Assembly: GCF_006345805.1 (NCBI RefSeq)
Contig: NC_043009.1
Location: 32,302,001 to 32,366,000 of the forward strand
Direction: 5' to 3'
Length of the DNA: 64,000 nt
DNA from: Octopus sinensis
Lineage: Eukaryota
The notes below the pieces were generated by a model, which saw only the letters and a program-made list of their open reading frames with translations, did no database searches and was not told the origin of the DNA. Below are positions 2,261 to 53,976 of this stretch, in pieces. Both the position numbers and the translations under genes were made by a program. The first letter of the stretch is position 1; each line of letters opens with the position of its first letter.

Positions 2261-5201
2261 TGTGTGAATGACAGAGAGGGAGAGGGAGAGAAAGAGAGTG
2301 TAGGTAAGTATTATGTAAGCATGTAGGCTTGCATGTTTGTGCATGTGTGTGTGTATTATGATATCAAATCGACATTCTTTTATCGTTGTTACTTCAAATT
2401 TAATTTATTCCGCACAGACAACATTTATATGGTGTGTGTTTTCGTTTTTGCTTGTTTTATCTTTTGTTAAAATATTTCTTGTCGATTTCTAATTAAATGA
2501 ATTGCAAACACTGAACTTCCTCTTTGCTAACTTGAAAAACAATTTTCTATTTATTGTCGTTAATTGCGTATTCATTTATTTATTCATTTAGATGTCTTTG
2601 TGTTCAGCAATTATTTTATTTCAAATTCCTTGTATAAATTTCTACTTCAATCTTAATTAATTTTCAAATGTAGGATTTAATCAAATCACCGCCTGCTTGT
2701 ATTTGAAGCCATTCTAAACTTCATTTTGTCTCAGGCATATTTTTATTCAATGAAATCTTTACTCTTCACAAACCCTGTCATCCATTCAAATCATATAGCA
2801 TCATGATGACAAAAAATATCGAAACATGACGCCACTATCCTTATTTAAGTCTTTTGCTAAATATATATTAATGTCATCTTGTCACCAATAGCTTTACAGG
2901 AGCAATCTCGCGGTTAAACATTGCCAACTTTTCGTGCTTTATGAAACGAGCAACGAACTACCAGTTTCGAGTAGAAAACTCATAAAAGGGATTAATATAC
3001 ATGCTTCACGTCAGCATTTATTTATATTATTTGCATATATACGTGTATACGCGACTCATAAATGCAAATTTGTCTAAAGCGTATTGAGAAAGTGCATTTG
3101 AAGTATACTGAAAAATGTATGTATATACATATGTATATGCATATATGCATATAAACCAATACATATAAGAACAAATAAAAACAAGACCTCTTTGTCTTGT
3201 AGTCCCCATACATCGCTTTGTCCTCTAATAACAATTTAGTTAATTGTGAGGAGATATAAAATCAAGGGAGATATTTTGATGCCAACGTTGGATTTTATAT
3301 ACTAAGGCATTGAGGTCAAGATACTTGTAAATATTGATATTGTGCAACCTACTTTATGGACAAGTATTACCACGGGGCATATTTCAACGATTAAATCGAA
3401 CATCGGTGTATTGTAAAAAGGGAAATCAATATGGCGTAATAAAATATGTTCGTAAAGAGTCAATGTTTGAACTAACGTCACCTGCTTCTGTGAATATAGA
3501 GGTTGAAATTATCTCCATAATAAGCTAGAATGGCACAAATCTTCCTTTAGCTCGCAAGTATGTTGCCATCTTTGATCTCAATACTGGATCGCCAGTATGT
3601 AGTTAGCTACTATTGCAAATTCCACTTTCCAGTGATAAATGCTGAGTCTATAACTTTAGTCAGTAACTCTAGACATGAAACACGTAAAGTGTTGTGTCAA
3701 GTGAACCAACGGAAACCAGAGCTCACAATAGCCAGTATCCAAAATATACTGTTAGAATTTAAATCAAAGAAACAATATTTTGAACGGTTTAGTCGAATGA
3801 GGAATGATAGTGCAGATTTTCAATGTCTCTGTAACTTGTGGAAGCTGGGAAAATATTATTATCAGAAAAACATCAAACATGAATGCTTGCAAAGGAATGA
3901 ATTCCACCAAGAGCACTCAAGTGCCCGTTGCTGTTGTAAACCGGCCTCAGATTACTTCCACAACCCTCACCCCTAATATACGGATAAGCAATAATGTAAG
4001 AGCAGCTTCTGTTATCAAACATGAGACATCGGTATTGCAAAATAACTACAACATAATTAACCTAATGAATATGTATTGTAATTTAAATCAAACAATTTTA
4101 GTTCAGTTCCGCACGGCGTGAGTGTATAAGCATCACTTTAATTACTGGGTCATAAATAGAGATGCTGTAGTTGTGAAATTTGCAATGATATGCAAACTTT
4201 AAAATGCAAACTGTAAATTTTCTAAGATCGAAGATCGTGCCTTAGAAAGTTTTTGAAAATTTGCAAAATTTCATTGTCTCCAAGTTAGAGTGATAAAAAT
4301 AATACTGTAAAAAATGAAAAGCAAGTAAATTTAAGGTGTTAAGAAAACGCACAAAAACACTAGAATTATCATTCTATGATTGTATAAATAAATGTATTAA
4401 TTCTTGTAAAAATTTAATTACACCTATTGAAATACTTCTTTGATCGAGAATCAATTTACATTGTTTTTGTGAAATTGACTGAAAGAAAGAGATTTTAATG
4501 AATTACAGAACTTGCATTTAAAAAATGTTTCAACTAAAGAACAGTTAAAGAATCCTTTAAAAATATACAAAAGTTAGTTTAGAAAATTGACAAAAAGTGC
4601 TGGAGATTATAAGAAAAAAGTATTTCACAATACAGCAGTTTGTTAAACATAGAGAATGCATTGTATGTCAATTGTAGTCTGTGTCATTTATGAAGCAAAG
4701 AATGTGGTGAAAATAATCGTAGATTATTCTCTCTTAAATACTCTTTTACCAAATCATGTTTTTCATATAAATAGGCCTTTGTGTGTCTACTCGTGTGTGT
4801 GAGAGAGTATGTATCTGGTGTTATAGGGAATCTGGTTTCTAAAACCCAAAGAAGAATTCTCGGACGGAAAAAAACATGACTCGATGAATAGCATGAAATA
4901 ATATTTGTAAGAAAATATAAAACGGAAAGTTGTACCAGTGAATGAAATTAAAGCTGCAGCTTTTAAAATATTTCATACAAGATAAAAATCGAAAAATTTC
5001 TTGGGAAGGAAAGGTATCTTAAGTAAGATATCATAACATGCAACGGTATGAATTAGCAAACGGGGTACTTATTTTTATCAACCTTTAGTATATAGCGAAC
5101 ATCTCTTTACATTGTACTGATAGGTTTTGAAGTCACATTATACTTATATTTTCAGATTTCTAAACCGATCACATTTTCTGCATGTATTAGATTTTATCCG
5201 G

Positions 5202-8368: not shown

Positions 8369-10923
8369 CGTGGATTCTTACATTATTTGCATTCGTATCT
8401 GTTGCTGGAAATGACAAATTTAAAATTTACATCTGATTGGTTTTATAACATTTAATTATTTCTTTTGTAAAATCCAAAATAAATTCTATTACATGCATAA
8501 ATTGAATGAGTACATAAAGAACAGAGTAATCGACAGGATAGTGATCATCTTTCAACCGATAGAACGAGGAATTTTCAACGTTGTCGCACGAACCGCTAAA
8601 TACAGAAGTTAAGTCTCCCTCAAAATACACTGAAATATCTAAAACGGGATATACACAGTAAACATAGTCAAAAAGCCAAGATAATCATAGTGGAATTCCT
8701 TTGATTTTTTACTTTATAGGTTTGCTGGAATAAGGGTCACTGATATATGTAGAGTTAAACAACAGCGGCTCCCAATTTTAAGACTGGTTAACTTTAAATG
8801 TTATGTTCTCCTATCTGAATTAGCTTTAGTAACTTTTGACTTGCAAGAGTAACAGGTAAGCAGTATTTACGTTTAGAGTTCCCTCTAACTTTTACCCCGA
8901 TCAGTATTGTTTACCGTCACTTCTTCTTATGGTACACTCTTTAAACATTCTATTCCGGTTTCAATCACCATCATTACGAATTTATATCTAACAGAGTCAA
9001 CCTCCTCAATACTTGATATCTTTAAACAAGGTTTAGTATTATTAGACTTTAACTAATCCCTAGGTCAGTATCACAAAAATTAGCTTTTGCACTCTGTCTG
9101 GATAACCATCCATGAGGCCATGACACCTGTATCATGAATCTCTGAATTTTGTTGGAGGGAATGTCATTCTACTATTTAATCCATCACTTTCCGCTTCAAT
9201 AACACTTTTTCTGGCGGCTCAGTATCGTTAACTTTCAGTCGTCATCACCCAATTCTGAATTGTCTACGTTGGTATCATTACCACAAGATCTCTATATGTG
9301 TGACACTATTATTAATAAGTTTTGATTTCTCCTTGGATTAACATTGCTCATGCCTGGTTCACCTTAATTAAGTTTTTGATTTTTACTGAGCTTGCACCAT
9401 TAACCACATATTTTATTCATTGCCACCAACATTACTATAGTATTTCTATTTGTGTCACCATTATTAAGGGTAACCCTGCTTGCGTCAACATAATTAAGCA
9501 GTGACGGCAATGTTTTGACTTCTTGTGACTGGATCAATATGATAAACATTCGAATTCCACTCAGCTTAGCATTACAAGAATCAGTGAGGCTGCTCCTCAT
9601 TAAAATTGTTATTTCTCTAGACCAGCGATATAAAAAAATGACATTTGCCAGTATCAGTATTATTAAAACTTGATATCTGCCTGGGTTAACATTTTTGAAA
9701 GTTGCTATGTGCATGAGTAAGCATCATTAAGATTGACGTTGGTTCAATCGAATCATTGGCAAGCAAACTTAGACCGTGCCTGCATTTTCACAGTTTCTGA
9801 TATCTTGATTGTGACTGAAGATAATATTAAGCGTACACATATCTAGAGAGCTTGTATGCTATTACGCTACAATTCAATAAGTCTAAGTATTTCTATTCAA
9901 TTTCTGTCAAGTACAGCACCAATGTTAATGAGAGGTTTATGAGCCCTTTCCACCCACTGCCCATAGTCCATAACATTATTAAACCCCAATCCCGTTTTTA
10001 TTTAAACGAGTATCAACTGAATTCATTTCTTTTTCTTTCAGTCTCTCATTTCCTGTCCTTCTCTCATTCTCGTGAAACAAAATACGTATTTGTAAACGCG
10101 TGTACGGGTATGTTTCTGTTCATATGCACATACTCATGCTTCTCCGGGCGCGCGCGTGTGTGTATGTGTGTGTATTTACATGCATGCGAGTGATGGTGTC
10201 TTTGTTGTTTGCCTCAGTGTTTGTTATTGTTATTTTGCCGAAGGGCAATTCTGAATGAACGAACATATGACCCAATACTGCCCAACCGCGAACATCCTCG
10301 TATTATTTTGACCAGCTGAGTATCTACAACTATGTTGTCCAATGCATAACTTTCTCTTTTTTAACACAGTGTAAGTTATGGCTTGAAAGAGATTTGATCG
10401 CTATTTCTATTAGATTGAGCCAGAACCTAGCGGCCTTTCCTCATTGTCTCGTAATGTCTATGTATTTCGAAATCATTGTTAGAGTAATATGTCAGAAGAG
10501 GCAGTTATATTCACAACTGTAAAGATATTGATCAATATCACCAATATATAAACGACAGTTATATCTCTTCTGTACTTTGAACAATCCAAAATATTGCTGA
10601 TTGTAACTACAATATTGTAAGTTTACAACACAAACAAAACGCTACTTTTACATGGAAGCTATTACACACTTCACCTATTTCAAGATATTCAGTTTTCATT
10701 GCAGCTTTTAAATACATTCTTCTATAAATACCTGACAATATGAACCCATGGATTTCCTGCTATGTTTTATGGATATCAATTTATTTTCCACTACTTATAT
10801 ATCTCCCCATTCTTTCTCTCTCTACTTCCTCTATCGCACTTTTTCTCTTTCCCTTTCTCTTTCTCCTCCTCTTTCTCTCTGGCTTGTATATTAACAGAGA
10901 AATATTTATTACTGATATGCCAA

Positions 10924-11055
10924 CGGAGTGGGTTGGAGGCGGTAGAGCGTTGCACAAAATACTTAGCGGTTTTCGTTACTACTTTTACGTTCTGAGTTCA
11001 AATCTCGCTGAGTTCGTCTTCGCCTTTCATCCTTCAAATTTCGGGGTGAAAAAAG
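10924..11055 (+). mobile_element. SINE family B, 5' part, degenerate
   Basis: AAATACTTAGCGGT...TTACGTTCTGAGTTCAAAT (B-box)...GCCTTTCATCCT matches the copy at 51251-51508. Confidence 0.75.
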
Positions 11056-12002
11056 GGACTCACACAAAGACATACTTATTTCTTCCTGAGTTCAACAATT
11101 CCTACTTACTTCTATTTCCTGAATTTTATATGTGAATTTCACCCGGAGAAATATATCGAAGTCTATTGGAATTGATCACGTGGTGTTTTTCTTCTTTTGA
11201 ATGCCTTTGACAACAATATCAGAGCAATTCATCTTAGTCACGCTGTTTGGAAGAATCAATATGTCCTAGAGTTTTGTTGCATTGTCATTCACTGAGATCG
11301 CTTATACTTGTATACGTTCAGACCATTTTCTCTGAATATTTCATAACCCTGGTGTAATAACAAGTGTATATCAGCTCTAACTCTATCGCTCTATCGTATC
11401 AGTTGATGTATTCACTGTTGGTTTGCTATGGGCGGCCAGACAATGGCATTCATTGGCTTTCTGATCCCCTCATAGTTTGCAATAACGGATTGTATTCGGC
11501 TGGAATATTTGATTTTAATAATTTCTGGCGAGAATTCTTTGGAAGGGTACTGCAATAAAACAGATATACTCTGATGTCAGTATTGAATTAGTTTCAAATC
11601 AAAGAATCTCTTGGTTTATCATTCCAGCTTTTTTAAGCTGCAGAAATTCTCCTGGACTTTATGCTTTAGTAAATGCTACAGAACACAAGTTTACCGATCA
11701 CCCACAAAAAGTTTGAAGTTCACTATTTCCCTTACTTCAATAATTTCCATGTCCGTGCATACGACCTTGGCTCTTATTCTGGCTTCATCGCTCCTTTTGG
11801 TAACACGTGATTTTCTCTTGCTGGGTTTCTTTTAATTCTCCTCTCCAGGCAACATAGACGTAACGGGTTTTTTCATATTAGGTCTCACATTTAAAAGGTG
11901 TGACTGCACTATGTGCCGCCAGAATCATCTGACGCAGATATGATATATATATATGTATGTATGTATATATATATATACATATGCATATATATATGTATAC
12001 TC

Positions 12003-12404
12003 TCTTTACTCTTTTACTCTTTTACTTGTTTCAGTAATTTGACTGCGGCCATGCTGGAGCACCGCCTTTACTCGAGCAAATCGACCCCGGGCCTTATTCT
12101 TTGTAAGCCCAGTACTTATTCTATCGGCCTCTTTTGTCGAACCGCTAAGTGACGGGGACATAAACACACCGGCATCGGTTGTCAAGCAATGCTAGGGAGA
12201 CAAACACAGACACACAAACACATATATATATACATATATACGACGGGCTTCTTTCAGTTTCCGTCTACCAAATCCACTCACAAGGCATTGGTCGGCCCGG
12301 GGCGATAGCAGAAGACACTTGCCCAAGATGCCACGCAGTGGGACTGAACCCGGAACCATGTGGTTGGTTAGCAAGCTACTTACTACACAGCCACTCCTGC
12401 GCCT
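12003..12404 (-). mobile_element. tRNA-derived SINE family A, full length, with central (TA)/(TG) spacer
   Basis: Minus strand reads GGAGTGGCTGTGTAGTAAGTAGCTTGCT...GGTTCAGTCCC (A/B-box head), then CTTGGGCAAGTG, an internal microsatellite, and a (GAGTAAAA)n tail. Multiple homologues occur in the window. Confidence 0.9.
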
Positions 12405-12408
12405 CATG

Positions 12409-12445
<37 letters not shown>

Positions 12446-12574
12446 GTATATATATGTATATATATATATACATACATATATATATGTGTGTGTGTGTGTG
12501 TGTGTTTGTGTGTGTATATGTGTGTGAGTGTGTGAATATATATACATGTGAATGTTTGGTAAGAAGCGTGCTTC

Positions 12575-14019
12575 TGCGCACGCGTCACCCAGAGTGCATT
12601 TGGTTTGTCGTTTTGGAGTGAGTCGGACGTTTTTTGTGCTGCTTTGAAGGTAGAGACGATGTACTCAGTCTTTAGCAGGTCGGAGTTATCTTCAGCAAAG
12701 GAGGAGCTGGTAAGGACGGTCATAAAGATGGACGGAGTATTGGAGAAGACAAGGAGTATTGCCGAGGCCACGGAAATGAAGCGAAGGGAGCTGGACTTGG
12801 CTGGTTTGAAGGAGTATGAGATGGTGCAGAAGTTGGGAGGTGACGTGAGGTTGTGGCCCCTCAAAGGCAATATGGTGCGGATGGACAGAAAAACAATCAC
12901 CTATAAGTGGTTCTCGTTAAAAGGAAAAAAGGCCGAGCAGGTGGAAGTTAAAACAGTAAAGGCGCTAAAGGTACGGTCTAAGGAAGTGACATATATAACC
13001 AAAGGAAGGAGATATGAGACGAGGGTCGTCCAATTTAGGACAGGAGAGGAGGCGAGGAGGCTGGCGAGTGTGGCGGTGAAAACAGAGGCAGTAGTGCTTC
13101 TGCCCACATACCTTGGAAGAAAGACTTCCAACGTAAGGGTAAAAACAATCCCACCTGATATAGAAGTGGCTTGGGTGACGGCGGCTGTCCTTGTTGGAAG
13201 TGAAAAGAAAGTGGCTGTACTTCAAGCCACAGAGGCGGAGGAAGGAGGTTGGAAAGGGAAGACATTGGAATTGATTATACAGACGGAGGAGAGACAACTG
13301 GAGAGTTTGGCAGAGACAGTGATGCTGGGGGAAATTGTGCTGAGAGTGTGAGTAGAGGGCAGAGTACCACGTTGTTTTAAATGTGGCCAAAAGGGCCACA
13401 TTAGAGCTTGCTGCTCTCTGCAGAGGACAATAGCAGAAGAAACAGTTGTGGAGACGGAAGAGAAAAGAGAGGAAGAAAAGACAGAGGGAGGAAAGGAAGA
13501 AAAGGAGGAAGAATGGAGAATAACAGAGTAGAAGGAAGAAAAGAAAAAAAGAACACTGAGTGTGATGTGGTACCCCAGTCCAACTCCATCTCACCCAAGA
13601 CCACTCAAACCCACCTCCCCATACAGCCACCAAACCCACCTACCCCATTTCCCCACAGGAAAAAAAATTTAAAAAAAAGAGCGGACACCTCAGAATTTAG
13701 AAGACCCCTCCCCCGGTGAAAAACGTTACGAGAGAGTGCAGTCATGAAGCAATAGCGGAACTGGAACAGAGACTAAAAGGAAATTAGGACTCAGAGGCAA
13801 CGAGTGGTGTTGCTCAGTGTTGGATGAGTAGCACTCTCTTCATATTTTCATTTTCAACTCTCACGCATGTTATCATAATTCTAATTTGTTTTTCATGTTC
13901 ATTTTCATGTCATTCATAACACCATATGTTATTTTTGTATATTTTTAATTATTACATGTCCCCACATGTGTTGTACAGTCCCCTCTATGTAAAGCCTTTA
14001 TGGCTAATTTGACGAAATA
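12575..14019 (+). mobile_element. ORF1-only Tx1/L1-like non-LTR element A (gag-like, CCHC zinc knuckle), decayed
   Basis: ORF 12605-13351, in-frame TGA, then VEGRVPRCFKCGQKGHIRACC (CX2CX4HX4C, 13373-13414), a Glu/Lys- and Pro-rich tail, a T-rich 3' UTR and AATAAA. No RT or endonuclease motif. Bounded by target repeats. Confidence 0.8.
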
Positions 14020-14035
14020 AAGAAGCCTGCTTCCC

Positions 14036-15543
14036 GAAGTTTTTGTCGGACGTGTTTGTTTCGCTGCTGGTAAGCATTTTTGCTGTTGCTGAAAACGTTG
14101 GATTACCATTTGGAATTGTTATTGTTATTTGTTGAACGTTAAATTTTGTTGTTGAGCATTGTTGAATTATTTCCCGGCTTTACCGAGCAATAACAAACAG
14201 AGAAGGAATTGTTGACCATTGTGGCATTTTATGAACGTTGTTTTGTCAAACTGTGAATAGTCTTTTGGACTAATTTTTGTGCCTGTCCCCCTAACGCGGG
14301 TGGGATTTGGAGTTTGTTAGTGAACTGTTGTCCTCTTCAAGAGGAAAATTTTTATTTCCCATTTTTGTGGGAAACTATTTAATTTGTGTAATTAACTTGT
14401 GAAATTAATTTCAGCCGAAAAATGTCGGTTGAAATTATACATGAGAGGTGTGTTCTCGTAGAGAGCAAGCAAGAAAATGTGAAAAAGTTCTCGGTGGTTG
14501 CCGTGGTGGCAACCGAAAATATCGACATTTCTGTCGATCAGCTGGAAGGTGTATTTAAAAGAATGAAAGTGGAGGGCGATGACGTTAAAATATCGCCCTC
14601 TTCCAGTGTGGTCAACACAGAAAACCGGACTGTACTGTTTAAATCGTTCTGCTCACAAAACAGAAGGTTTCAACACTTCGAGAAAGAGAAAATTGTAAAA
14701 TGCCTGTCCGCGATATGGAAAGACGTAGCCTATATTGCAAGGGTACGGGCCTACAGTACAGTTGAGGTCCGTTTTTCTAGTGGAAAGGTGGCCAGCGGGC
14801 ATTCCGTGTGTCTCTTGAAGACAAAGGAGGTGTTACTTCTACCAACATACATGGGAAGGCAGACTTTCCATGTGAAGGTGAGAGAAGTACCACCGGAGTG
14901 TGATCCGAAGGAGGTGATGACCGTCTTTTGTTTAACAAGACGGACCGTATAAAAGTCTTGAAAATTACATGCTCTGCTCTCCAGAACTGGGTTCCAGCGG
15001 AGCATTACAGCAATTGTATAGGAGACGCAGAAAGACCTTCAGGAGGTTTCCGAAAGGGTGGTCGTGGGCGAGAATGTGGCCCTTAGAGTGCAGGTGGAAG
15101 AAAGAAAACCCACCTGCTATGAATGTAGGAAAAAGGGCCACATTCGCGTGGACTGCGAAACAAGGAAAAAAAGAAAAGGAAAAGATGAAAAAAATGGCTC
15201 AGACACCAGCTCCTTCAGAAAACACTAAAATTGTCCCCAAACCTGCGCATATACCAGACCCTACACAAGTAAAACTTCCCACTCCCCCACCAGGTAAGTG
15301 AGGTCGCGTTAAGGAGTAAAGGTTCAACCCAGATGGCCGGGTGCCTTTCTTTCAACGCTCCTCATTGTGGAACGCAATGACCTATTCAAAATTTAAATTT
15401 TTTATTACATATTTCATCGATTCAATTTTTCATCCAATTGATTTGACATTTCTAAAAGGTAAAAAGCTTCTTCACACTTTATGTTTGTCTGTCCTTGTTT
15501 TTCCCCTCTATGTAATGCATGTATGGCAAATCTATATGAAATA
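14036..15543 (+). mobile_element. ORF1-only Tx1/L1-like non-LTR element B (gag-like, CCHC zinc knuckle), decayed
   Basis: ~385-bp 5' UTR, ORF 14422-14952, frameshifts, then RVQVEERKPTCYECRKKGHIRVDC (15115-15156). LLLPTYMGRQTFHVKVREVPP is homologous to VLLPTYLGRKTSNVRVKTIPP of element A. The 3' end is shared with A. No ORF2. Confidence 0.8.
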
Positions 15544-17324
15544 AAGAAGCTTGCTTACCACCCACGTGATTCCGGATTCAGTCCCATTGCGAGACACCTT
15601 GGGTAAGTGTCTTATACTATAACCTCACGCCGACCAAGAAAGAAGCCTGTTGTATATACATATATATATATACATGTTTTTGTGAGTCTGCTTGTGTGCG
15701 TGTCTGTCTGTCTGTCAGTATTTGTCCCCACCACCATCACTTGACAATTGATGCTGGTGTGTTTAGGTGTGTTTCGGTTCCTGTAACAAAAGGAATGGAA
15801 ACAATAAGTACTAGGCTTACAAAGAATAAGTCCATGGGTCGATTTCTTAGACTAAAACCCTTTAAGGCGGTGATCCAGCATGGCCGCAGTCAAATCACCG
15901 AAACAATTCAAAGAAAAAAGAATACATATTAGATATGATATAATATCAGCATAAGAGGTAGTTAGGTGACTCGTGAGTGCAACTGGTGACACACACATAC
16001 CCCTAATACATGTATGTATATATGTGTGTCTGTATATATGTAATTGTGTATGTATGCGCATTTTGAAATTCCGTTTAGGCTTAGCAATACGAATAACCTG
16101 GTGTTAGAACTCAATATACGTAGGTCTCGGAAAGAAGCGCCAGACGAGTACAACGCTTTGTAATAATGGCTTCATTCTAACATTGATACAGCGGCAGTAA
16201 CAAATGCACAAACACTCACATGTACATTTATGCATGTGTGCGTGCGTATGTGTGTTTGTGTGTGTCTGCGTGCATACGTAGTTTTATTTGTATGCGGGCG
16301 GATAAGTGTGTACATATAAGGCTGCGTATGTACACGTTGAGAACTTCGTTTTGAAAAAATATTGGAAGAAACATTACATTCTTTAGACAAATATTTTAAA
16401 GACAATTTTTGCTGAGAATATAGCCATTGGTTAGTTATATATTATATATAAAAAAAAAACTTTCTTACCTGTTTTGTCGCTAACAAACTAGCCTCGGGGC
16501 AAACTCAAGTTGAAAGAATATAACATCATTATGTGAGTCTGAATGTGTGTGGCATTTTGTGTTGTCCTTGTGAGTGTGTGTCTTTATGTGCGCTTGCATA
16601 TATGTGTGTCTGTTTGTGTATGAGTGTGTGTATGTGTGTGTGTGTCTTTATAATTCTATTTATTTCATTTGATTTCCTTCATAGCCTTTGTTCTTAGCAG
16701 TTTTTGTTGAATGTTCATTCTTTTGTATTTGCAGCCTCCAAACGTATCAATAAAAAAAACATTACACGAAAACAAGAAAATAACAAACACCGTTGTCCCC
16801 AAAATTCCCTTTTATTATACCAAATTCCTCTCTCACAAATGGATTGTTTCCTGTTTAATTTTGTAACAATAGCCCTAAATAACATGCTTTGAATGAAGCA
16901 AAGAAAGAAAGAATAAAAGAATAAGGTAGAAGAAGAAAAATACACAAAAAACACCTTTTCACAGAAATTATGAAAGCAATGTGATTATACGCTTTTGTAT
17001 AATTCGTCAGTTATAATACAATATTTCATCATATTGTTGTTGTAACACAAAAAATATTGATTCTAATAAAACTGATTCTTCATGCAAGTAAATGAAAACT
17101 CTTTTTTAATGGAATATAAAACAGAAATGAACTTATGAAAGAAAACAGCCTAACAGAAATTTTGCAATAAAATAGTATAATCAAAGTTGATATGAATCTT
17201 TTGAATTGCGCAAGTTCTCATTATTTGGTCAACCAATGTTAATAATGGTTGCTATCTCTGCATATTTTAACATACAGACTAAAATATCATTTATTTTATT
17301 TAAATAAATGAAGATGATAATAAC

Positions 17325-18834: not shown

Positions 18835-18930
18835 CAATATATCTATCACTATATCTATATATATATATATATATATATATTTATCTTTTTATTTATTTCT
18901 CTATCATCTATCTGTTTATCTATATATCTT
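18685..18930. repeat. (TCTA)n/(CA)n/(TA)n compound microsatellite
   Basis: Directly visible. Confidence 0.9.
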
Positions 18931-18932
18931 AT

Positions 18933-19556
18933 GTCGAACGACTGCTATTGCGTGTGGGACGAGTCAGTTTATCAACCGAGTCTATCGTGAATATTATCGC
19001 GCCTCTTTTCTTGAAACGGGAAGGGAAAGCCGTTTTCATCGTACTTGTGAATATGGCGAAAGAATCTGTATGGTAGACACGTCTGAAAGGTCTAGAAACA
19101 AACACTTTCCTCTCTGGTGAATCTCACATCAGAGAAAGGTGAGAGTAGAGAGGGAAGGTTTGTCTAGTGTATGTTTCAAAAATAGATGGGTGAATGCAGC
19201 AAGGATGGCACGTGTGAATGACGGAGCCACATTGAGCATAATCGTATGAACCAGAAAAAGAAAGGGAAAAAGAGTCACTTACTGTAATGTGTTTTTGCAT
19301 GACACTATTGCCCGAGGTTACCGTGGTCTTTTCCGTGGGCTTTTCTTTCAACGAATAAACCCAGTCTGCTTCCCATTTTACACTATGACATTTCTGTGGT
19401 ACACGATCCCTATTGATTGGCTTCCCCCGCTTTTTTCACGATCCCTTTTGATCGAAATTCTACCGCTCTTTATTTTCTTCCTTTCTTCCCAAAAACAAAT
19501 GCTCGACTTCGTATTTTGTCCCCTCTCTGTTCAGCCCTGTGTGGCCAATAAAAAAA
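18933..19556 (+). mobile_element. 5'-truncated Tx1-clade LINE: ORF2 C-terminus plus 3' UTR, inserted in (TCTA)n
   Basis: VERLLLRVGRVSLSTESIVNIIAP...MAKESVW*TRLKGLETNTFLSG...RKVRVEREGLSSVCFKNRWVNAARMARVNDGATLSIIV* (stop 19247-19249). The 3' end is CCCCTCTCTGTTCAGCCCTGTGTGGCCAATAAAAAAA, with TCTA repeats on both sides. Clade assignment is from recalled similarity. Confidence 0.7.
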
Positions 19557-19676
19557 TCTATCTATCTATTTATTTATTTATCTATCTATTTATCCATCTA
19601 TTTATTTATTTATCTATCTATTTATCCATCTATTTATTTATCTATCTATTTATCTATATCTTCATCTACCTATCTT

Positions 19677-41525: not shown

Positions 41526-44010
41526 TGAGTTTTAGTTGATAATGAATTCTCTAATAGCTAAGTAGAACCGGTCGTAGAACCATGAAAGATAAAAATCCAC
41601 AATCACATATACCACAGATGCAGCATTTATTTAAATACACGAAGCTCTCATTGTATAGGGCGATAAACATACTTTCAATTATAAATGGATATATCATTAT
41701 AAAACTCATATGAAAGAAGGTATCATGCTTCACACCTAAATACAAACTCATATGTGTTACAATAACGCCAGAAAGAAAAATCTCCTCAACGACAAGAAAT
41801 CACGAACCAGTAAACAACAAAATTTACTTCAAACAACGAATATAATATAAAAAAAAATTAAACCTGGAATTCATAAATTTTTATGAAAGTTATGTCCTTT
41901 CGTATAACTGTTTCACTGGAGACTGAATTACGATACACTCGTTGGTTGATCATGCATCGATATTACAGAACCATCTAGTTGAGGCATTTAGGAATTTTTC
42001 TGCACTTTAGTGTTCCAAGTCAAAGACCGAAAAGAACTTTTACAATATATGAAAAAAAAAAATTCTATACAACATAATATATTCTATAGAGCACACATAA
42101 ATACGTATAGACATATACATGTTTATTACTATTTAGAAATTTAATATTGCAATATATATAATAGAGAGGTAATAAACGCCAGAGATATGAATGCTGAAAA
42201 TGTAGCCCCAAGAATGATTTGCACAAATTTATCTCTCGATCAAGATCACACGATTGCTGCCTTCAAATAAATATTTCGTTTATTGTGGAAATTAAACCAT
42301 TTGAAATAACATTTCACATCATAAAACTACACCGAAATGATTTTTGACTTTGGTGCAAAGCCATCATTTATAGAGAAGGAATCGTGAAATTAATAAATGT
42401 TGTCCATATTGCTGTAAATAGCATTAGCAATGTAGGCAAAAAGAATTACATTTAACATGGAGTAGAAATCAGCTTGTCTATTTAAATCTGCAGGAACTAT
42501 TTTCACGTCACTTTCTAGTAGTTTAAATAGCTTTGCTTCATATTTTAAAAGAAACCAATCATAATTTCATTTAATGTATCTCAGAAACAGATTTTCAATT
42601 TTGCAGCAGTTTTATTAACACCACTCCGCTATGATGTATGAAGAGAAATTTTCAAAAAAAATATTGAATAGTTTTTCATTAGATTTTATTTATTGTAAGG
42701 CCAAAGCATTGCAATATAATTTATTCACTGGCTTCTACTCATCATTCTATTATGGGATTCCAATACCCTTTCTTATTTTTTCCTTTTATTTGCTAATATT
42801 TTTCTTCCCCTTTTTTCTTTTACATTTTGCATTTGCGATTTGTTTGTATTTTTAAGGGATGTCGAAATATTTTCAGCTTGGCCAGCGATTTAAGTTTAAA
42901 TACTCTCAAAACATCAAAATGTCAGAAAATTCACTGAACCATTACAATGATCAATTTCTTTTTTAAGTGATACATTTTAATTATGATTTATCAGTGAGCA
43001 TTTCTCCTACGTAGCAAACTGGAAAAAATATGTAAAGGAACATATTAAAAAATATATTATAAAACAAGAAAAAAATATCATACACGTACACAGAAGAGAA
43101 AACCTCCATCGAAATGTTATTATTACCAACATCAACTTCCCCAATTCCTGCTTCTAATGAAATGAAATATGCAGAAACTGATAGAATGTGTATTTTTCCT
43201 CTTATTTTCGGTATTTATTTGATTCCCTTTATTGTTTATTTATTCAAAAATGGATGCAATATTTAGGTGCAACTACTGCATATTAATTGGTTTAAAGGAA
43301 ATTTATGCAATATTTCATACATTTCCCATTAGAAATGGTAAGAGAACTTTTCCAATTTACAATGGTGTTAGAAACTTTTCAATTTTAGATGGCGCTACCA
43401 ATTTCAGAATTTGCAAATGATAAAACATTATATTTCTATTTATGTAATATAAAAATATTATTAACAAATTTATGCTTTTGATTCATAAAAAATAGTTTGA
43501 TATTAGCATGTTTAAATTATGAAAATTGCTTCAACTTGTATTACATGGAGCGATTTTCAGCAGATTTTCTGTTTGGAAATATTTTATAAATTCCTTAATC
43601 TGAGAATAATATAATAAATGTTGCAATTTGATGATGGTATGTAATTATTCTGTATTTCTTTTGTAATTGCTCTTTAATTTTATAATGTCCGCAGAAGTCC
43701 GATAATGAAATTTAGTATTTATAATTATTGAGTTTCGTATCGAGTCATTTGGAAACTATTGGCAGAGTTTCTGATCGTGATATATCAGTAATGAGAGCGG
43801 CTTAAGAATTATATCCTTTGGATATGTTGCAAATACTACAATTGTCTGCAAAAAAATATTATGCTCCGCTGTAGTAAAAAACAAACAAACAAACAAAAAA
43901 AACACTATAATTCTAGCATTGACATCTACGATTAATAATTGTTGCATCAATCCTTTGCAAAGATTTTTTTTAACCCTTGTGCATCGAAATTTCATCATGA
44001 ATTCTATAAA

Positions 44011-44211
44011 GGAGCAGTCGTGACTGTATGGTGTGTATGCTTCCCAAACCACATGATCCAGAGTTCAGTCCCACTGCGTAGCACCTTGTGCAAGTGTCTT
44101 CTACTATAGCCTCGAACCGACCAAAGCCTTGTGAGTGGATTTGGTAGACGGAAATTGAATGAAGCCCATCGTATATGCGTGTGTATATGTATACATATAT
44201 GTGTGAGTGTG

Positions 44212-44263
<52 letters not shown>

Positions 44264-44750
44264 CATATATATGTGTCTATAGATACATAGTTGTGATACC
44301 TGTGCCGGTGACACATAACAAAGCACCATCCGAACGTGGCCGTTGCCAGTGCAGCCTCCACTGGCTTCTGTGCCGGTGGCACATAAAAGGCACCATCCGA
44401 ACGTGACCGATGCCAACCCTGCCTCGAATGGCTTCTGTGCCGGTGGCACATAAAAAGCACCATCCGAACGTGGCCGATGCCAGCATCGCCTTGACTGGCT
44501 TCTGTGCCGGTAGCACATAAAAAAGCACCAACCGATCGTGGCCGATGCCAGACCCCTCTGGCACCTGTGCAAGTGGCACGTAAAAAGCACCCACTACACT
44601 CGCGGAGTGGTTGGCGTTAGGAAGGGCATCCAGCTGTAGAAACACTGCCAGATCAGACTGGAGCCTGGGGCAGCCCCTGGCTCCCCAGACCCCGGTCGAA
44701 CCGTCCAACCCGTGCTAGCGCGGAAAACGGACGTTAAACGATGATGATGA

Positions 44751-44786
<36 letters not shown>

Positions 44787-45020
44787 TGTATGTATGTATG
44801 TATGTATGTATGTGTGTGTGTGCCTGTGTTAGTCCTCCCACCATTACTTGACAACCGAGGTTGGTGTGTTTACGTCACCGTAACTTAGTGGTTCGGCAAA
44901 AGAAACCGATGTAATAAGTACTAGGCTTATAAAGAATAAGTCATGGTGTTAATTTGTTCGACAAAGGGCGGTGCTCCAGCATGGCCACAGTCAGATGACT
45001 TGAAACCAGTAAAAGAATAA
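44011..45020 (+). mobile_element. SINE family A copy interrupted in its central microsatellite by another element
   Basis: 5' half at 44011-44171 (GAGTTCAGTCCC B-box). 3' half at ~44815-45020 with the CAGTAAAAGAATAA tail. Confidence 0.85.
44296..44750 (+). mobile_element. 5'-truncated SINE/RTE-tail-type element with tandem ~67-bp units and (TGA)n tail
   Basis: Units begin CTGTGC at 44300, 44368, 44435, 44502 and 44565, then GGCGTTAGGAAGGGCATCCAGCTGTAGAAAC...GGACGTTAAACGATGATGATGA. RTE affinity is from recalled 3' tails. Confidence 0.75.
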
Positions 45021-47219
45021 AATAATAAAAAAGTAAACGAATACATGACAGAAGCTCAAACGTAAAGCTGGAAGTACGTGTGATACTGCTACTGGATAGC
45101 AGAGGGCGAAATCTGAAGGTGGACGATCTGTATTCTGTACTCTACTACGTCCTTAACAGAATATACCATAGCTATATGCACATATATAAATATATATATA
45201 TATATATTATATATATATATATATATAATATATATATATATTGGATGGACGGAAGGGGTGGCAGTGTGGGAGGGGTCAGTTATTCTTTAAATGGTTATAC
45301 CCACTAAATCTACACACCGTGTATCGTATTTCCATGAAAAATATTCTGCTTTCCCTCATATGAATTGATATTAAGAATCTGATACATGGAGTTTATTCGA
45401 TGGCTATAACATCGAGTGTTTACGTCATCATATCTTCATAACTAGAACGGTTAGTAATATTGCTATCTGTCTCAAACCATTTAATGAGGAACCATAATAT
45501 ATTTATCAAGAGCTGCAATATTTTCTTGACGATCCATGATACCAATGTTTAAACAAGATTTTAAAATTATTAACTAAACAAGCACGGTCTCTCTTCATGG
45601 TGTCATTACTTTAATCTGTAATTAAACTGTAATGGCAGCGCCCATACTCACTTGAAAGGACTTCGGTGACAAGCAGGTGAAATAGAGGAAGTTTTACTTG
45701 ACACGTGACCCGGCTCCAAAGCTTGTCATGAAACGGTTTCTTTCAAATGCGCCCTAACACCAAATGGTGTCAGTGACACGCTGCAGAATGAAGCCAGTCA
45801 ACTACAGATTACGTTTCTAATAGATCGAGACCAACGCTTTTCTAGAACGCAATCCCTGACTGATATATCTAGAAACGAACTATCTAAAAGGAATATGAGC
45901 CGACAAATCGTTACTAGGCAGTATCTTATATAATCTGTATTACTCTATGGATAGAATATTTTTCGTTGGTTGATGATGTTAAGTTGTAGACGGATGCCTT
46001 TTTTTTTTTACTTGGCCAGCTATGACACACATTACAAACACAGCGCTTGGAAACGCGCTCAATTAACTGTGTACTGCTGTTCAAATATTCAACGTAATAC
46101 CCGAAACAAGTTTCAAAGCTGAACTGTTAGACTAATACAATTATCCATGATGCAAGGTATGGTACAGTACTATGTGTTGGTAAGCAGGCAATGCTGACAA
46201 GTTGAGATTATACTAAACAAAAGACTAATGTACTTTAACAAAAGTAGAGAGATGTTACATTTGTATAATTATTATTTCTCAGTCAATGCACTAATAACAA
46301 TAATTAATCATGATCAATCACAAATTCCTATTTCACAACCACAACTACCATCCTATTCCATAATACACATTTCATTTCACCAATCAATGATGAAAACAAT
46401 AATCAATGCTAATGCACATTTGTTCTATATAACTAAATTCCCCAGCACCTCTAGTATGCTGCATCTTATGCATTCCACTTATTACCAATTGGTGTTCGAT
46501 AATAAAACACTGTGTTTGATAATTGCATAATAGTCAAAGATTTTGAAATATTCGACGGTATTCGTTTGATTTTGGTACACATTTAAATACAAAAGATGTT
46601 TTCACTTGTGCTCTCAAAACATTCCATTTGGTGTAACTTAAAATATAGATTATCATATTTCTGATTTCTCATTATTTGGAGTTAAGCTGGTTCTTGTTGC
46701 CTCTATCCAATCACCATTTTTCATGGACAAAACAGTAGAAAGTTGGAGAAAGTGAAATGATGTGGTTGCTTCTCAGAGACAGATTTTAATGAAAAATATG
46801 TGAATGTATACGCGTGTGAGTGTGCGAACGCACGTGTATATCTATGTGTGTGTGTATATATATATGTGTGTATATGTTTTTAAGTGTATGTATGTATTTT
46901 ATTTGTGTAGCAAGAAAGAGGGAAAGAGAAGTTGGAGAGGATGTGAAATAAACTTATAAGAAGGCGCAGCTAAGGCGTAATAAGATTGATAAATTACGAG
47001 AGGGGGAGAAAAGGAAAGAGTGGCCTATATGGAGAGGAGGAAGAGCTATGAGCTAAGTCATCTCGGGTTACTGAATCTTCATGGTATCCAATGAGGATAG
47101 AATTTTATTATGTTTTAGGGACAATTTTATGCAATGGCTTTAGTTAGATTTTCTCATATCACCATGTGGGTAGTAATATAAATTTATTGGTATTTGGTGG
47201 CAAATAAAAGAAATCGTTA

Positions 47220-48240: not shown

Positions 48241-48647
48241 TTATTTCTTTATTTCCCACATGGGGCTAAACATAGAGGTGTGAAACATGGACAGAGAAAG
48301 GAATCAAGTCGCATCGACCCCAGTGCGTAACTGGTACGTATTTGATTGACACCGAAAAGCTGAAAGGCAAAGTCGACTTCGGCGGAACTTGAACTCAAAA
48401 CGTGGAGACAGACGAAATACCTATTTCATTACTACCCAAAAGGGGCTAAACACAGAGAGGACAAACAAGGACAGACAATCGGATTAAGTCGATTACATCG
48501 ACTCCATTACTTAACCGGTACTTAATTTATCGACCCCGAAAGGATGAAAGGCAAAGTCGACCTAGGCGGATTTGAACTCAGGACGTAACGGCAGACGAAA
48601 TACGTCTACGCATTTCGCCCGGCGTGCTAACGTTTCTGCCAGCTCAC
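48241..48647 (-). mobile_element. SINE family B with tandem second body unit (183-bp period)
   Basis: Complete copy 48647-48421, followed by a headless repeat 48420-48241. GACGAAATAC occurs at 48594 and 48411. Confidence 0.85.
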
Positions 48648-50039: not shown

Positions 50040-51250
50040 AGTATATATGAGTATATTTATATAAATGTGTACATTTATGTAGCAGTTAATTGTGACATAC
50101 AGTTGTAATAATTGTGCTATTCATATTTTTAGGCCTTTCCTATTGAGTTGATAGCTATTTTTGTTCAGTTAACCAGACAAAAGTGTCCAAAAATGCCAAT
50201 CTTATTTTCTATGTAAATGCAGCATATGAAAACTCAACGTCGTGATTATCGATGTAGAAATAACTTGTGTTCGTTATTAAGTGCCGTCTTCTGAAATACC
50301 AGGAATCTCTTGAGATGACCACCCATTTATCAATTTATACTTAAGTTGCTTTTTACAATTATTTCACCGTATCTTCTCATTGTCTCTGAAAATAAATGCA
50401 TCACATTATATTTTACTTCATCTCTTCCAGAATTACTTGTCTTCAAATATAAATGTGTATCATTTTATGTTTTGTGTTGAACGAGGAAGTTTATAAGTTT
50501 ATGAGGGTTTCTAAATCACAAGTACATTATTCACTTTGTTACAAATTCATTGCTGCTTGTTTGTAATGTCACTGTATTTCCTTTTCTCGTTCAGTCAGTC
50601 TCTCTCCACTCTCTTGCTCTTTCTCTCTCTATATAAGAAGGTGATAATAATTAGGTCACACTGTGTAACATTGAGATGCAGATTGTCTGGCAAAAGTACT
50701 TGTCTTTTGGCTAAACAAGAAATAAAAGCGCATATCATGTAGCATTCAGTTGCTTCTCATTGATATTTTCGAAGTAGACGTAAATGGCTCCATGATCTAT
50801 TTACTGCCTTAGACAACAGATTTAACGAGTATTAATGTAATAGGAGACAAATACAGGTGATGAATTTTAACTTACTACAATGTTTGTATGCGAATCTATA
50901 ATTTCAATGTGTTACTTCAACAAAAAACTGTCTTGTTATTCTATACAATCACATTGGCAGGCAGGATAGACAAATATCAAGATTTAGATAAAGAGTTGCA
51001 CCAAACACGTTGTGTAATATTTCCATTCAATTTCCATTCAACAGCTGTGACAGGATACAACAAAAGCCATGTAGTAATATAAGGCTTGGAGTGTACTCAT
51101 GAATGTACAATTTTTATGCATTATGGAACAATGGAGTTCACTTCCTTCATCAGGATTTTGGCTGCACTACGTGATTTCTTGGATTGGTACCAGTTGACCC
51201 GATGCCTGCAGTATAAAATGGATCGACAGAAACTTACTAAAATAAGGTTT

Positions 51251-51508
51251 CGAGCTGGCAGAAACGTTAGCACGCCGGGCGAAATACTTAGCGGTATTTC
51301 GCCAGGCGAAATGCGTAGCCGTATTTCGTCTGCCGTTACGTTCTGAGTTCAAATTCTGCCGAGGTCGACTTTGCCTTTCATCCTTTCGGGATCGATTAAA
51401 TAAGTACCAGTTACGCATTGGGATCGATATAATCCATTCAATCCGTTTGCCTGTCCTTGTCTATCCCCTCTGTGTGTAGCCCCTTGTGGGCAGTAATGAA
51501 ATAAGAAA
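51251..51508 (+). mobile_element. tRNA-derived SINE family B, full length, with internal 27-bp duplication
   Basis: GAGCTGGCAGAAACGTTAG head, GAGTTCAAATTC B-box, and GGTCGACTTTGCCTTTCATCCTTTCGGG core (similar to conserved central SINE domains, from memory). Duplication at 51274-51300 / 51301-51327. Confidence 0.9.
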
Positions 51509-53427: not shown

Positions 53428-53511
<84 letters not shown>

Positions 53512-53643
53512 TGTGTGTTTGTTCCCCAGTATCACTTGACAACCAACGCTTGCAAAAGTAAGTCCTGGGGTCGATTTCTTTGACTAAAACCTTTTAAGTG
53601 GGTGCTCCAGCATGGCTGAAACAAGTAAAAGAGTAAAAGAATA
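53290..53643 (+). mobile_element. SINE family A copy with internal deletion in the 3' half
   Basis: GAGTGGATTTGGTAGACGGAAGCTGAAAGAAGC, (TA)n(TG)n spacer, GAGTAAAAGA tail. Confidence 0.8.
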
Positions 53644-53751: not shown

Positions 53752-53976
53752 GTGTGTGTGTGTGTGTCTGTGTGTTTGTTCCCCAGTATCACTTGACAAC
53801 CAACGCTTGCAAAAGTAAGTCCTGGGGTCGATTTCTTTGACTAAAACCTTTTAAGTGGGTGCTCCAGCATGGCTGAAACAAGTAAAAGAGTAAAAGAATA
53901 CATGCATATATATATGTGTATATATATATATTTATATTATATTATATTATATTATATTATATAATGTATATATATA

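What the first reader, a model, noticed from the sequence alone, without database searches (positions are those of the whole stretch)
12548..15924. Two different non-LTR elements inserted in tandem at one site in a SINE's tRNA-like head: candidate SINE-targeting retroelement family
The same short sequence occurs at all three junctions: AAGAAGCGTGCTTC (12561-12574), AAGAAGCCTGCTTCCC (14020-14035) and AAGAAGCTTGCTTACC (15544-15559). It is the segment just 3' of the A-box in SINE family A (compare the intact copy at 12365-12404, minus). Removing both inserts restores one continuous SINE. This pattern is expected from successive sequence-specific insertions with ~14-16-bp target duplications. The Tx1 clade has known target-specific members (Xenopus Tx1L in a DNA transposon, Keno in U2, Dewa at tRNA arrays, Kibi/Koshi in microsatellites). 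Targeting an abundant SINE would give a self-renewing safe harbour and would split A-box from B-box, silencing the SINE. The three copies differ at 1-3 positions, which fits age but leaves open that the elements carry the target at their ends. Specificity is inferred from one locus.
Basis: partly seen in the sequence, partly recalled or inferred. Interest (0 to 1): 0.9.

Follow-up and report, generated by a model that had tools for sequence, protein, structure and literature searches.

The report
Two retroelements stacked in one SINE
One old octopus SINE copy was hit twice at the same nucleotide by two distantly related, reverse-transcriptase-less relatives of an L1/Tx1-type LINE, which points to non-random site choice but does not yet show a family dedicated to SINEs.

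Summary
The motif occurs three times with at most one mismatch, exactly at the three junctions. Removing both inserts restores one SINE that aligns collinearly with other copies. Elements A (1445 bp) and B (1508 bp) are non-LTR derived but not autonomous: each is 5'UTR, ORF1 with a CCHC knuckle, 3'UTR, and no ORF2.

Their ORF1 is homologous to the ORF1 of full-length 5.3-kb octopus LINEs that I retrieved. Those carry an ORF2 with an AP-type (APE) endonuclease, RT and zf-RVT domains, and its best solved-structure match is human L1 ORF2p. A, B, these LINEs and a second SINE family in the window share a conserved 3' tail.

Same-site reuse with a target-site duplication (TSD) between the two elements is the known hallmark of target-specific Tx1 elements. 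I saw the same pattern in an O. sinensis LINE array. However, no other copy I could reach sits in this SINE head. Relatives sit in another SINE's head, in sibling LINEs' 5' ends and in a microsatellite. The first six motif bases also match the tail terminus.

SINE targeting is therefore plausible for the A/B tail subtype but rests on one locus. No genome-wide flank census was possible. Verdict: partly supported, a new member of a known kind, moderate interest.

The parts
12548..12560 (+). 5' remnant of the host SINE (SINE1) head, the A-box-like region TGAATGTTTGGT, just upstream of the motif
   Evidence: Aligns to GTGGCTGTGTGGT of other SINE1 copies. Upstream of it lies (TG)n/(TA)n microsatellite.
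12561..12574 (+). Left copy of the duplicated target, AAGAAGCGTGCTTC
   Evidence: D10. It lies in native SINE1 context, since other SINE1 copies read GGTAAGAAGCTTGCTTC.
12575..14019 (+). Element A, 1445 bp, an ORF1-only non-autonomous retroposon. 5'UTR 12575-12658. ORF1 12659 to about 13719, with an in-frame TGA at 13349-13351 and a frameshift between 13426 and 13540. CCHC knuckle about 13373-13411. 3'UTR with the conserved family tail at 13955-14019.
   Evidence: Translation. zf-CCHC below Pfam's cutoff (17.8 vs 20.8 bits). O. bimaculoides homologues at 48-67% identity. 39.8% aa identity to the ORF1 of the full-length LINE in L052. P0002 alignment shows the frameshift. Tail alignments. No ORF2 hit.
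14020..14035 (+). Middle copy of the duplicated target, AAGAAGCCTGCTTCCC, sandwiched between A's tail and B's 5' end
   Evidence: D10, D13.
14036..15543 (+). Element B, 1508 bp, a second ORF1-only element. 5'UTR 14036-14421. ORF1 14422 to about 15228, broken by at least two frameshifts and stops near 14940-15040. CCHC knuckle about 15115-15156. 3'UTR with family tail at 15479-15543.
   Evidence: Three-frame translations. zf-CCHC 21.1 bits, above the cutoff. 33.8% aa identity to A over 201 aa, with no nucleotide similarity except the last ~30 nt. Tail alignments.
15544..15559 (+). Right copy of the duplicated target, AAGAAGCTTGCTTACC, continuous with the rest of the SINE
15560..15924 (+). Remainder of host SINE1: B-box-like GGATTCAGTCCC at 15574-15585, an internal microsatellite, the body and the 3' end
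   Evidence: 68.9% identity to the SINE1 copy at 12010-12404 over positions 24-395. Collinear alignment.
12010..12404 (-). Uninterrupted copy of the same SINE family, used as reference for the empty site
18925..19558 (+). 5'-truncated copy of the autonomous LINE family (ORF2 C-terminus, 3'UTR and family tail), inserted in a (TCTA)n microsatellite
   Evidence: tblastn with the L052 ORF2, aa 1026-1130. Tail motif. Sequence.
51250..51505 (+). Copy of a second SINE family (SINE2). Its last ~65 nt are homologous to the tails of A, B and the LINEs. It is not in a SINE1 head. TSD GAAAC[T/A]TACTA.
48241..48645 (-). Tandem dimer of SINE2 with the same family tail, at a different, unrelated site (TSD about ATTT(T)ATAG)

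Best explanation
The interval 12548-15924 is one old SINE copy that was hit twice, at the same nick position, by two distantly related ORF1-only retroposons, A and B. They belong to an octopus L1/Tx1-type LINE family. Neither encodes an endonuclease or a reverse transcriptase.

Mechanism, partly shown and partly inferred: each was copied in by target-primed reverse transcription carried out in trans by an autonomous LINE of the family. That LINE recognises them through the conserved 3' tail. The bottom strand was nicked at GGT(A)|AGAAGC in the SINE head. The nicked DNA could pair with the AAGAA(G) at the RNA 3' end. The top strand was cut 14-16 nt downstream, which produced the duplication. 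The first insertion left an intact copy of the site on each side, and the second insertion re-used one of them. That gives the A - TSD - B sandwich.

A and B share a distinctive tail subtype despite very divergent ORF1s. I infer that they use the same partner, and that this partner's endonuclease or priming step has a real preference for this site in the SINE head.

Shown: anatomy, homology, tails, duplications, same-site reuse. Inferred: trans-mobilisation, a shared partner, and that the SINE sequence itself is the recognised target. The confidence given is for non-random, target-directed same-site insertion. That most copies of this subtype sit in SINE1 heads I rate at only about 0.3.
For: - Motif triple exactly at the junctions, and a restored collinear SINE.
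- A and B each have the architecture 5'UTR-ORF1(CCHC)-3'UTR-tail with no ORF2.
- Their ORF1 is homologous to the ORF1 that sits upstream of a 1132-aa ORF2 in full-length LINEs of O. vulgaris (L052) and O. sinensis (L060). That ORF2 has Exo_endo_phos, RVT_1 and zf-RVT domains, and its best PDB match is human L1 ORF2p at 2e-71.
- A conserved ~65-nt tail is shared by A, B, the LINEs, other ORF1-only elements and SINE2.
- The A and B tails are 81% identical to each other and 53-69% identical to all others. Their ORF1s are only 34% identical.
- Solitary ORF1-only relatives have clean TSDs: L053 9458-11055 with a 19-bp TSD, and L060 2495-4185 with a perfect 16-bp TSD.
- A second same-site sandwich exists. 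In L060, LINE iv is flanked by (C)AACTGAATACTCGTCAT, and LINE iii's tail abuts the left copy.
- Published precedent: Tx1-Mar and SINEU-3 insert into a mariner family with a 16-bp TSD, and 'tandem insertions sandwiching a TSD' are explained there as sequential insertion (PMC4494074).
- O. vulgaris has 13 recently active 'L1-Tx1' families averaging about 5.4 kb per insertion (PMC13282606). This matches the 5278-bp unit in L052.
Against: - The case rests on one locus only.
- Every other family member whose flanks I could read is elsewhere: the SINE2 head (L053), the first 16 nt or the 5'UTR of sibling LINEs (L060), a (TCTA)n microsatellite (window 18925-19558), and unrelated sites for SINE2.
- SINE2 carries the family tail and is dispersed, so at least some partners are not SINE1-specific.
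- In Logan contig L061 a tail also ending ...TAAAGAAG is followed by TTGTGGTG, not SINE1 sequence.
- AAGAAG may belong to the tail, which shrinks the certain TSD to 8-10 nt.
- The three copies differ at one position in three ways.
- The autonomous partner with the A/B tail subtype was not found.
Confidence: 0.5

Rival explanations
1. Neighbour-directed insertion. Members of this family insert at the junction of a resident family member, either at its 5' end or at its tail/TSD boundary, whatever the surrounding sequence. The first element landed in the SINE head more or less by chance. The second was attracted by the first, not by the SINE.
For: Head-to-tail adjacency is the most consistent pattern in the loci I recovered. 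L052 holds three units of 5278 bp. L060 holds five different elements, i to v, in a row. In L061 a family tail lies about 55 nt upstream of a LINE 5' end. L060 element i duplicated exactly the first 16 nt of LINE ii. The window structure A-TSD-B arises equally well if B inserted at A's tail/TSD boundary or if A inserted just upstream of B.
Against: It does not explain why both 3' junctions in the window read identically (GAAATAA|AGAAGC), that is, the same nick to the nucleotide, unless a sequence preference is added. L053 shows a solitary insertion into a SINE head with no family neighbour. The sampling is biased, because loci were reached through ORF1 gene calls and arrays contain more of those.
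Confidence: 0.25
2. A short-motif or microhomology preference plus target abundance. The machinery prefers sites resembling its own tail end, AGAA(A/G), because the nicked DNA must pair with the RNA 3' terminus. SINE heads contain such motifs and make up a large part of the genome. Under this view the double hit is a rare coincidence that caught the reader's eye.
For: Several target sites begin with AGAAG or AGAAA next to tails ending AAAGAAAT or GAAATAA. These are the window (AAGAAGC), L053 (CAGAAAC) and SINE2 at 51505, whose TSD GAAAC is preceded by CA. SINEs make up 11.6% of the O. vulgaris genome (PMC13282606).
Against: A 5-6 nt motif occurs millions of times in a genome of about 2.8 Gb (PMC13282606), so re-hitting one 16-bp site is very unlikely without further specificity. 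Another AAAGAAGC at 15636-15649 inside the same SINE was not used (D9). The targets of L060 i and iv do not carry the motif. A second same-site sandwich exists in L060.
Confidence: 0.15
3. The motif belongs to the elements, or A+B is a single composite unit that moves or was duplicated as a block. A related version is that the structure arose by recombination between two SINE copies, or by mis-assembly.
For: The AAGAAG part of the motif does match the canonical tail terminus. I could not obtain read-level or orthologous data.
Against: The CYTGCTTC(CC) part is absent after every other tail of the family. The left copy lies in native SINE1 context, and uninterrupted SINE1 copies carry the whole motif. 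A and B each have the complete architecture of solitary relatives with their own TSDs. Recombination between two occupied SINEs would still need same-site insertions.
Confidence: 0.05

Closest known systems
Tx1-Mar LINEs and SINEU-3 in crocodilians (Kojima 2015, PMC4494074)
   Same: L1/Tx1-type machinery. The target is an abundant interspersed repeat. TSD is about 16 bp. Non-autonomous passengers share the target. Tandem insertions sandwiching a TSD are explained as sequential insertion.
   Different: The target there is a mariner DNA transposon and specificity was shown on hundreds of copies (313 of 347). Here the target is a SINE head, seen at one locus. The passengers are ORF1-coding elements of 1.4-1.5 kb, not SINEs. 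The autonomous partner is unidentified.
Xenopus Tx1L in Tx1D; Keno (U2), Dewa (tRNA arrays), Mutsu (5S), Kibi and Koshi (microsatellites) (Kojima and Fujiwara 2004, as cited in PMC4494074)
   Same: A family in which different lineages each choose a different repetitive target. The octopus relatives seen here sit in SINE heads, in their own 5'UTRs and in a microsatellite.
   Different: Clade membership of the octopus family was not established by RT phylogeny. None of the listed elements targets a dispersed SINE.
ORF1-only (gag-only) non-LTR elements: mammalian HAL1 and Drosophila HeT-A (from my own knowledge)
   Same: They keep ORF1 and the 3' end and lack ORF2, and they depend on an RT supplied in trans. 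HeT-A also forms head-to-tail arrays at a defined place.
   Different: HAL1 is dispersed and L1-like with an A-tail. HeT-A adds to chromosome ends without TSDs. A and B have TSDs and a specific non-poly(A) tail.
Alu or L1 insertion into A-rich tails of resident Alus (from my own knowledge)
   Same: Tandem retroposons arise because the resident element's end resembles the preferred nick and priming site.
   Different: There the motif is TTAAAA/poly(A) and the new copy lies 3' of the old tail without re-duplicating the old TSD. Here the same 14-16-bp target is duplicated again.

Membership tests
Non-LTR retrotransposon (LINE), autonomous | Encodes reverse transcriptase, with an endonuclease | tested here: not met
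   There is no ORF2 in A or B. tblastn with the family ORF2 hits only 18930-19222 in the window. ORF listing and translations.
Non-autonomous derivative of a LINE family (ORF1-only) | ORF1 homologous to the ORF1 of a bona fide LINE | tested here: met
   A is 39.8% identical and B 31% identical to the ORF1 that lies upstream of the APE+RT ORF2 in L052. The family has 688 homologues at E<1e-3.
Non-autonomous derivative of a LINE family (ORF1-only) | 3' tail shared with the autonomous LINE | tested here: met
   The conserved block ...GTCCCCTCT.TGT...GCCCCTTGTGGG...AATAAAGAAAT is found in A, B, the L052 and L060 LINEs, L053 and L060 i, and SINE2.
Non-autonomous derivative of a LINE family (ORF1-only) | Flanking target-site duplications | tested here: met
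   14 and 16 bp in the window, 19 bp in L053, and a perfect 16 bp in L060 i.
Tx1 clade | RT/ORF2 groups with Tx1 references in a phylogeny | not testable with these tools
   No reference clade sequences are on hand. Indirect evidence only: L1-type domain set including zf-RVT, best PDB match L1 ORF2p, and 'L1-Tx1' being the only L1-like class in the list of recently active LINE classes reported for O. vulgaris.
Tx1 clade | ORF1 of the RRM-plus-CCHC type seen in the nearest named relatives | tested here: inconclusive
   A CCHC knuckle is present. Teleost ORF1-ORF2 relatives have ZCCHC3-type RNA-binding domains plus CCHC. The octopus ORF1 profile shows no significant match to them (probability 6.6%).
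Target-specific LINE lineage (in the sense of Kojima) | Most independent copies sit at the same position of the same target sequence | tested here: inconclusive
   2 of 2 copies with the A/B tail subtype are at the site, but in one locus. All other relatives are at other targets. No genome-wide search was possible.
Target-specific LINE lineage (in the sense of Kojima) | Tandem insertions sandwiching a TSD | tested here: met
   Window A-TSD-B. L060 iii-TSD-iv-TSD-v.
tRNA-derived SINE (the host element) | Head recognisable as a tRNA, with A and B boxes | tested here: inconclusive
   A-box-like and B-box-like motifs are visible by eye. ARAGORN finds no tRNA in the window or in L052, L053 or L060. 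Rfam gives no tRNA hit at E<=1 in 11900-16000.

The most novel reading that the evidence does not exclude
An octopus L1/Tx1-type lineage, whose autonomous member has not yet been seen, has an endonuclease specific for a 14-16-bp site in the head of the most abundant octopus SINE. It carries at least two anciently diverged ORF1-only passengers to the same site. That would be a LINE system that uses a SINE as a self-renewing safe harbour and inactivates each SINE copy it enters. It would sit within a family whose other lineages target another SINE's head and their own 5'UTRs.
Probability: 0.3. Interest if true: 0.7.

Novelty: new member of a known kind. Interest (0 to 1): 0.45.

Why it matters
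If SINE-head targeting is confirmed, it would add a SINE to the list of repeats that Tx1-type LINEs use as safe harbours. It would show LINE-derived elements disabling a SINE, the reverse of the usual parasitism. It would also provide a natural system of ORF1-only passengers with which to ask what, besides the endonuclease, sets target choice. Independently of that, this work links an abundant octopus SINE family (SINE2) to its probable LINE partner through a shared tail. It also shows that this LINE family forms head-to-tail arrays in two Octopus species, which is relevant to how cephalopod genomes accumulated their repeat load.

Tried and rejected
- **Genome-wide flank census: not possible.** The metagenome scan for the junction pattern gave 51 hits, all microbial chance matches with no SINE continuation. 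The viral-contig scan for the SINE core gave 0 hits.
- **Exact-protein look-ups.** They failed for P0001-3, P0016, P0022 and the window's own ORFs. They worked for five ids and are now exhausted, 12 of 12 used.
- **Junction peptide search.** A query built from the B tail plus the SINE1 head found no candidates at all. The protein database does not hold SINE-encoded ORFs, so this negative is uninformative.
- **Pfam on ORF1.** Only the CCHC knuckle was found. The profile comparison with teleost ORF1 was not significant.
- **A possible third occupied SINE1 head** at L053 about 14275 (minus strand), reading ...ggcaatatATAAAGCTTGCTTccc. Rejected because no family tail lies upstream.
- **Template switching as the origin of the A-B pair.** Rejected because a SINE-derived 16-mer lies between the two elements.
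- **Pol III read-through from the SINE promoter as the source of element RNA.** Rejected because B starts with a T5 run and the A and B boxes are separated by the inserts.
- **Structure prediction of ORF1.** Not run, because the link to LINE ORF1 is already shown by synteny with ORF2.
Full report
**Source and setting.** The window is AT-rich animal DNA full of SINEs and microsatellites. ORF1 homologues of the inserts are Octopus bimaculoides proteins. Copies of the host SINE in O. vulgaris and O. sinensis loci are up to 93% identical to the window's copy. The window is therefore from the genus Octopus or a close relative.

**Observation.** The three motif copies are at the stated coordinates. 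With at most one mismatch they are the only occurrences in 64 kb. With up to 2 mismatches there are 6 hits against 0.99 expected, and none of 100 shuffles reached that number. They lie exactly at the three junctions.

Joining the left flank to the right copy gives a sequence that aligns end to end with three other copies of the same SINE, which I call SINE1. One of these is the intact neighbour at 12010-12404 on the minus strand.

Three caveats apply:
- The head is tRNA-like only by eye. ARAGORN and Rfam find no tRNA.
- The SINE's first ~9 nt are missing.
- Position 8 of the motif is G, C and T in the three copies.

**What the inserts are.** A (12575-14019) and B (14036-15543) have the same plan. 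Each has a short 5'UTR, one ORF of about 270-350 codons ending in a CCHC knuckle, a 300-490-nt 3'UTR, and no ORF2.

- A has one in-frame stop and one frameshift. B has several disruptions.
- Their proteins are 34% identical, and their DNA is alignable only over the last ~30 nt.
- A profile of the ORF found 688 relatives at E<1e-3 in the representative library. None of the ten longest that I scanned has an RT fused to it.

Exact look-ups of a few relatives returned octopus DNA:

- **L052 (O. vulgaris OX597840.1).** The homologous ORF1 lies upstream of a 1132-aa ORF2 with Exo_endo_phos, RVT_1 and zf-RVT domains. Its best solved relative is human L1 ORF2p, at 2e-71 over the endonuclease plus RT. 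The unit is 5278 bp and is repeated head to tail three times at 99% identity. The third copy runs into an assembly gap.
- **L060 (O. sinensis CM016867.1).** Five different elements lie head to tail: an ORF1-only element (i) and four LINEs (ii to v). LINEs ii to iv are 76-92% identical to the L052 unit over most of its length, and the partly covered v is about 71%.
- **L053 (O. sinensis CM016880.1).** It holds a solitary ORF1-only element.

A recent O. vulgaris repeat annotation lists 'L1-Tx1' as the only L1-like class among recently active LINEs: 13 families, 421 insertions, 2.29 Mb, which is about 5.4 kb each (PMC13282606). This fits the unit found here. Assignment to Tx1 is therefore plausible, but I could not test it by phylogeny.

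**The tail.** The last ~65 nt of A and B are homologous to three things: the tails of the LINEs, the tails of the other ORF1-only elements, and the tail of a second SINE family in the window. That second family, SINE2, is at 48241-48645 (minus) and 51250-51505 (plus).

- This is the classic LINE/SINE shared-tail relation. It implies that A and B are mobilised in trans through the tail.
- A and B share a subtype. Over the last ~42 nt they are 81% identical to each other and 53-69% identical to every other tail. Given their very divergent ORF1s, this suggests a common autonomous partner.
- None of the other tails is followed by CYTGCTTC(CC), so the elements do not carry that part of the motif.
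- The canonical tail terminus is AATAAAGAA(A/G)(T). The AAGAAG of the motif is therefore ambiguous between tail and target.
- Uninterrupted SINE1 copies read GGTAAGAAGCTTGCTTC, so the target natively contains AAGAAG. The overlap is best read as microhomology that could help priming.

**Where other copies sit.** Sites with readable duplications:

| Element | Site | Duplication |
|---|---|---|
| L053 ORF1-only element (9458-11055) | Head of SINE2 | 19-bp TSD CAGAAA[C/T]GTTAGCACGCCG |
| L060 element i (2495-4185) | First 16 nt of LINE ii | Perfect 16-bp TSD GGATGTGATATAATGA |
| L060 LINE iv | A segment of the iii/v-type 5'UTR | (C)AACTGAATACTCGTCAT on both sides, with LINE iii's tail abutting the left copy |
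| 5'-truncated LINE (window 18925-19558) | (TCTA)n microsatellite | Not definable |
| SINE2 copies | Unrelated sites | Short TSDs |
| L061 (Logan contig) | Tail ending TAAAGAAG, about 55 nt upstream of another LINE's 5' end | Followed by non-SINE1 sequence |

The iii-iv-v arrangement in L060 is a second same-site sandwich. No other copy is in a SINE1 head. The family as a whole is not SINE1-specific, and different lineages appear to have different repetitive targets.

**Interpretation.** The window structure requires two insertions whose 3' junctions coincide to the nucleotide. Chance is not credible for a non-selective element in a genome of about 2.8 Gb (PMC13282606).

Kojima (PMC4494074) described exactly this signature, tandem copies sandwiching a ~16-bp TSD. 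He saw it for Tx1-Mar LINEs and their SINEU-3 passengers, which target a mariner family, and attributed it to sequential insertion by a target-specific endonuclease. By analogy, and given the shared A/B tail subtype, the best reading is that an unseen autonomous partner prefers this site in the SINE1 head.

B is more decayed than A, and the left and middle copies are the most similar pair. Both hint that B came first and that A re-used the upstream copy. The reverse order gives the same structure, so I do not rely on this.

Two rivals remain live:
- Insertion may be drawn to the junctions of resident family members. Arrays are the commonest context I saw.
- A short AGAA(A/G) priming motif, combined with the abundance of SINE heads, may account for the site. 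SINEs are 11.6% of the O. vulgaris genome.

The composite-unit and element-borne-motif readings are largely excluded by the solitary relatives and by the tail comparison.

**Consequences.** The inserts separate the A-box-like motif (12549-12560) from the B-box-like motif (15574-15585) by 3 kb. By the established requirements of type-2 Pol III promoters, this copy should be transcriptionally dead. That is an inference and was not tested.

**Limits.** The decisive census of flanks, the search for the partner LINE and the orthologous empty site could not be done. No octopus genome is searchable by DNA with these tools. The metagenome and viral scans returned only chance matches or nothing. A junction-peptide search found no candidates.

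**Verdict.**
- Observation: confirmed.
- Interpretation: partly supported.
- Novelty: a new member, with a possibly new target type, of the known kind 'target-selective L1/Tx1-type retroelements with non-autonomous passengers'.
- Interest: moderate, 0.45.
- The strong reading, a dedicated SINE-targeting lineage, has a probability of about 0.3.

Noticed in passing
window 48241-48645 (-), 51250-51505 (+); also L053 6001-6164: A second SINE family (SINE2, head GAGCTGGCAGAAACGTTAGCACGCCGGGCGAAATGC...) ends in the same ~65-nt tail as the L1/Tx1-type LINEs. This looks like a LINE-SINE partner pair in octopus. The 48241-48645 copy is a tandem dimer.
   Followed up: partly
L052 4445-19184 (O. vulgaris OX597840.1): Three head-to-tail copies of a full-length 5278-bp LINE at 99% identity. 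ORF2 is intact in one unit. The right end runs into an assembly gap of Ns. Units are joined by CAC(T/CC)GATA(A) before GGACGTTAC.
   Followed up: partly
L060 2479-20850 (O. sinensis CM016867.1): Five different family members lie head to tail. Insertions appear to go into the 5' terminal region of the resident LINE, which suggests a lineage that targets its own 5'UTR.
   Followed up: partly
L053 9439-11074 (O. sinensis CM016880.1): A 1598-bp ORF1-only element is inserted in the head of SINE2 with a 19-bp TSD. This is a second case of an ORF1-only family member interrupting a SINE head, but in a different SINE.
   Followed up: yes
window 18925-19558 (+): A 5'-truncated LINE of the same family (ORF2 C-terminus plus tail) is embedded in a long (TCTA)n microsatellite.
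   Followed up: partly
P0001, P0050, P0063, P0148 (proteins): Gene models fuse an ORF1-like segment to host-type or other transposon-type domains: a C2H2 zinc-finger array, LDL-receptor class A repeats, a Helitron/PIF1 helicase, and an RGS domain. These are either annotation chimeras or exonised ORF1 pieces.
   Followed up: no
window 44010-45022: A SINE1 copy is split in its internal microsatellite by about 500 bp of another repeat, which has ~60-nt tandem units (GGCACATAAAAAGCACCATCCGAACGTGGCCGATGCC...).
   Followed up: no
window 53500-53640 and 53757-53897: A local tandem duplication of about 257 bp contains the 3' part of a SINE1 copy plus flanking microsatellite.
   Followed up: no
It is possibly an expressed or high-copy ORF1-only element. 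The species of the runs is unknown to me.
   Followed up: no
window 12563-12574: The target contains an inverted repeat, GAAGC-NN-GCTTC. A's duplication ends exactly at the end of this palindrome. Whether this matters for cleavage is unknown.
   Followed up: no
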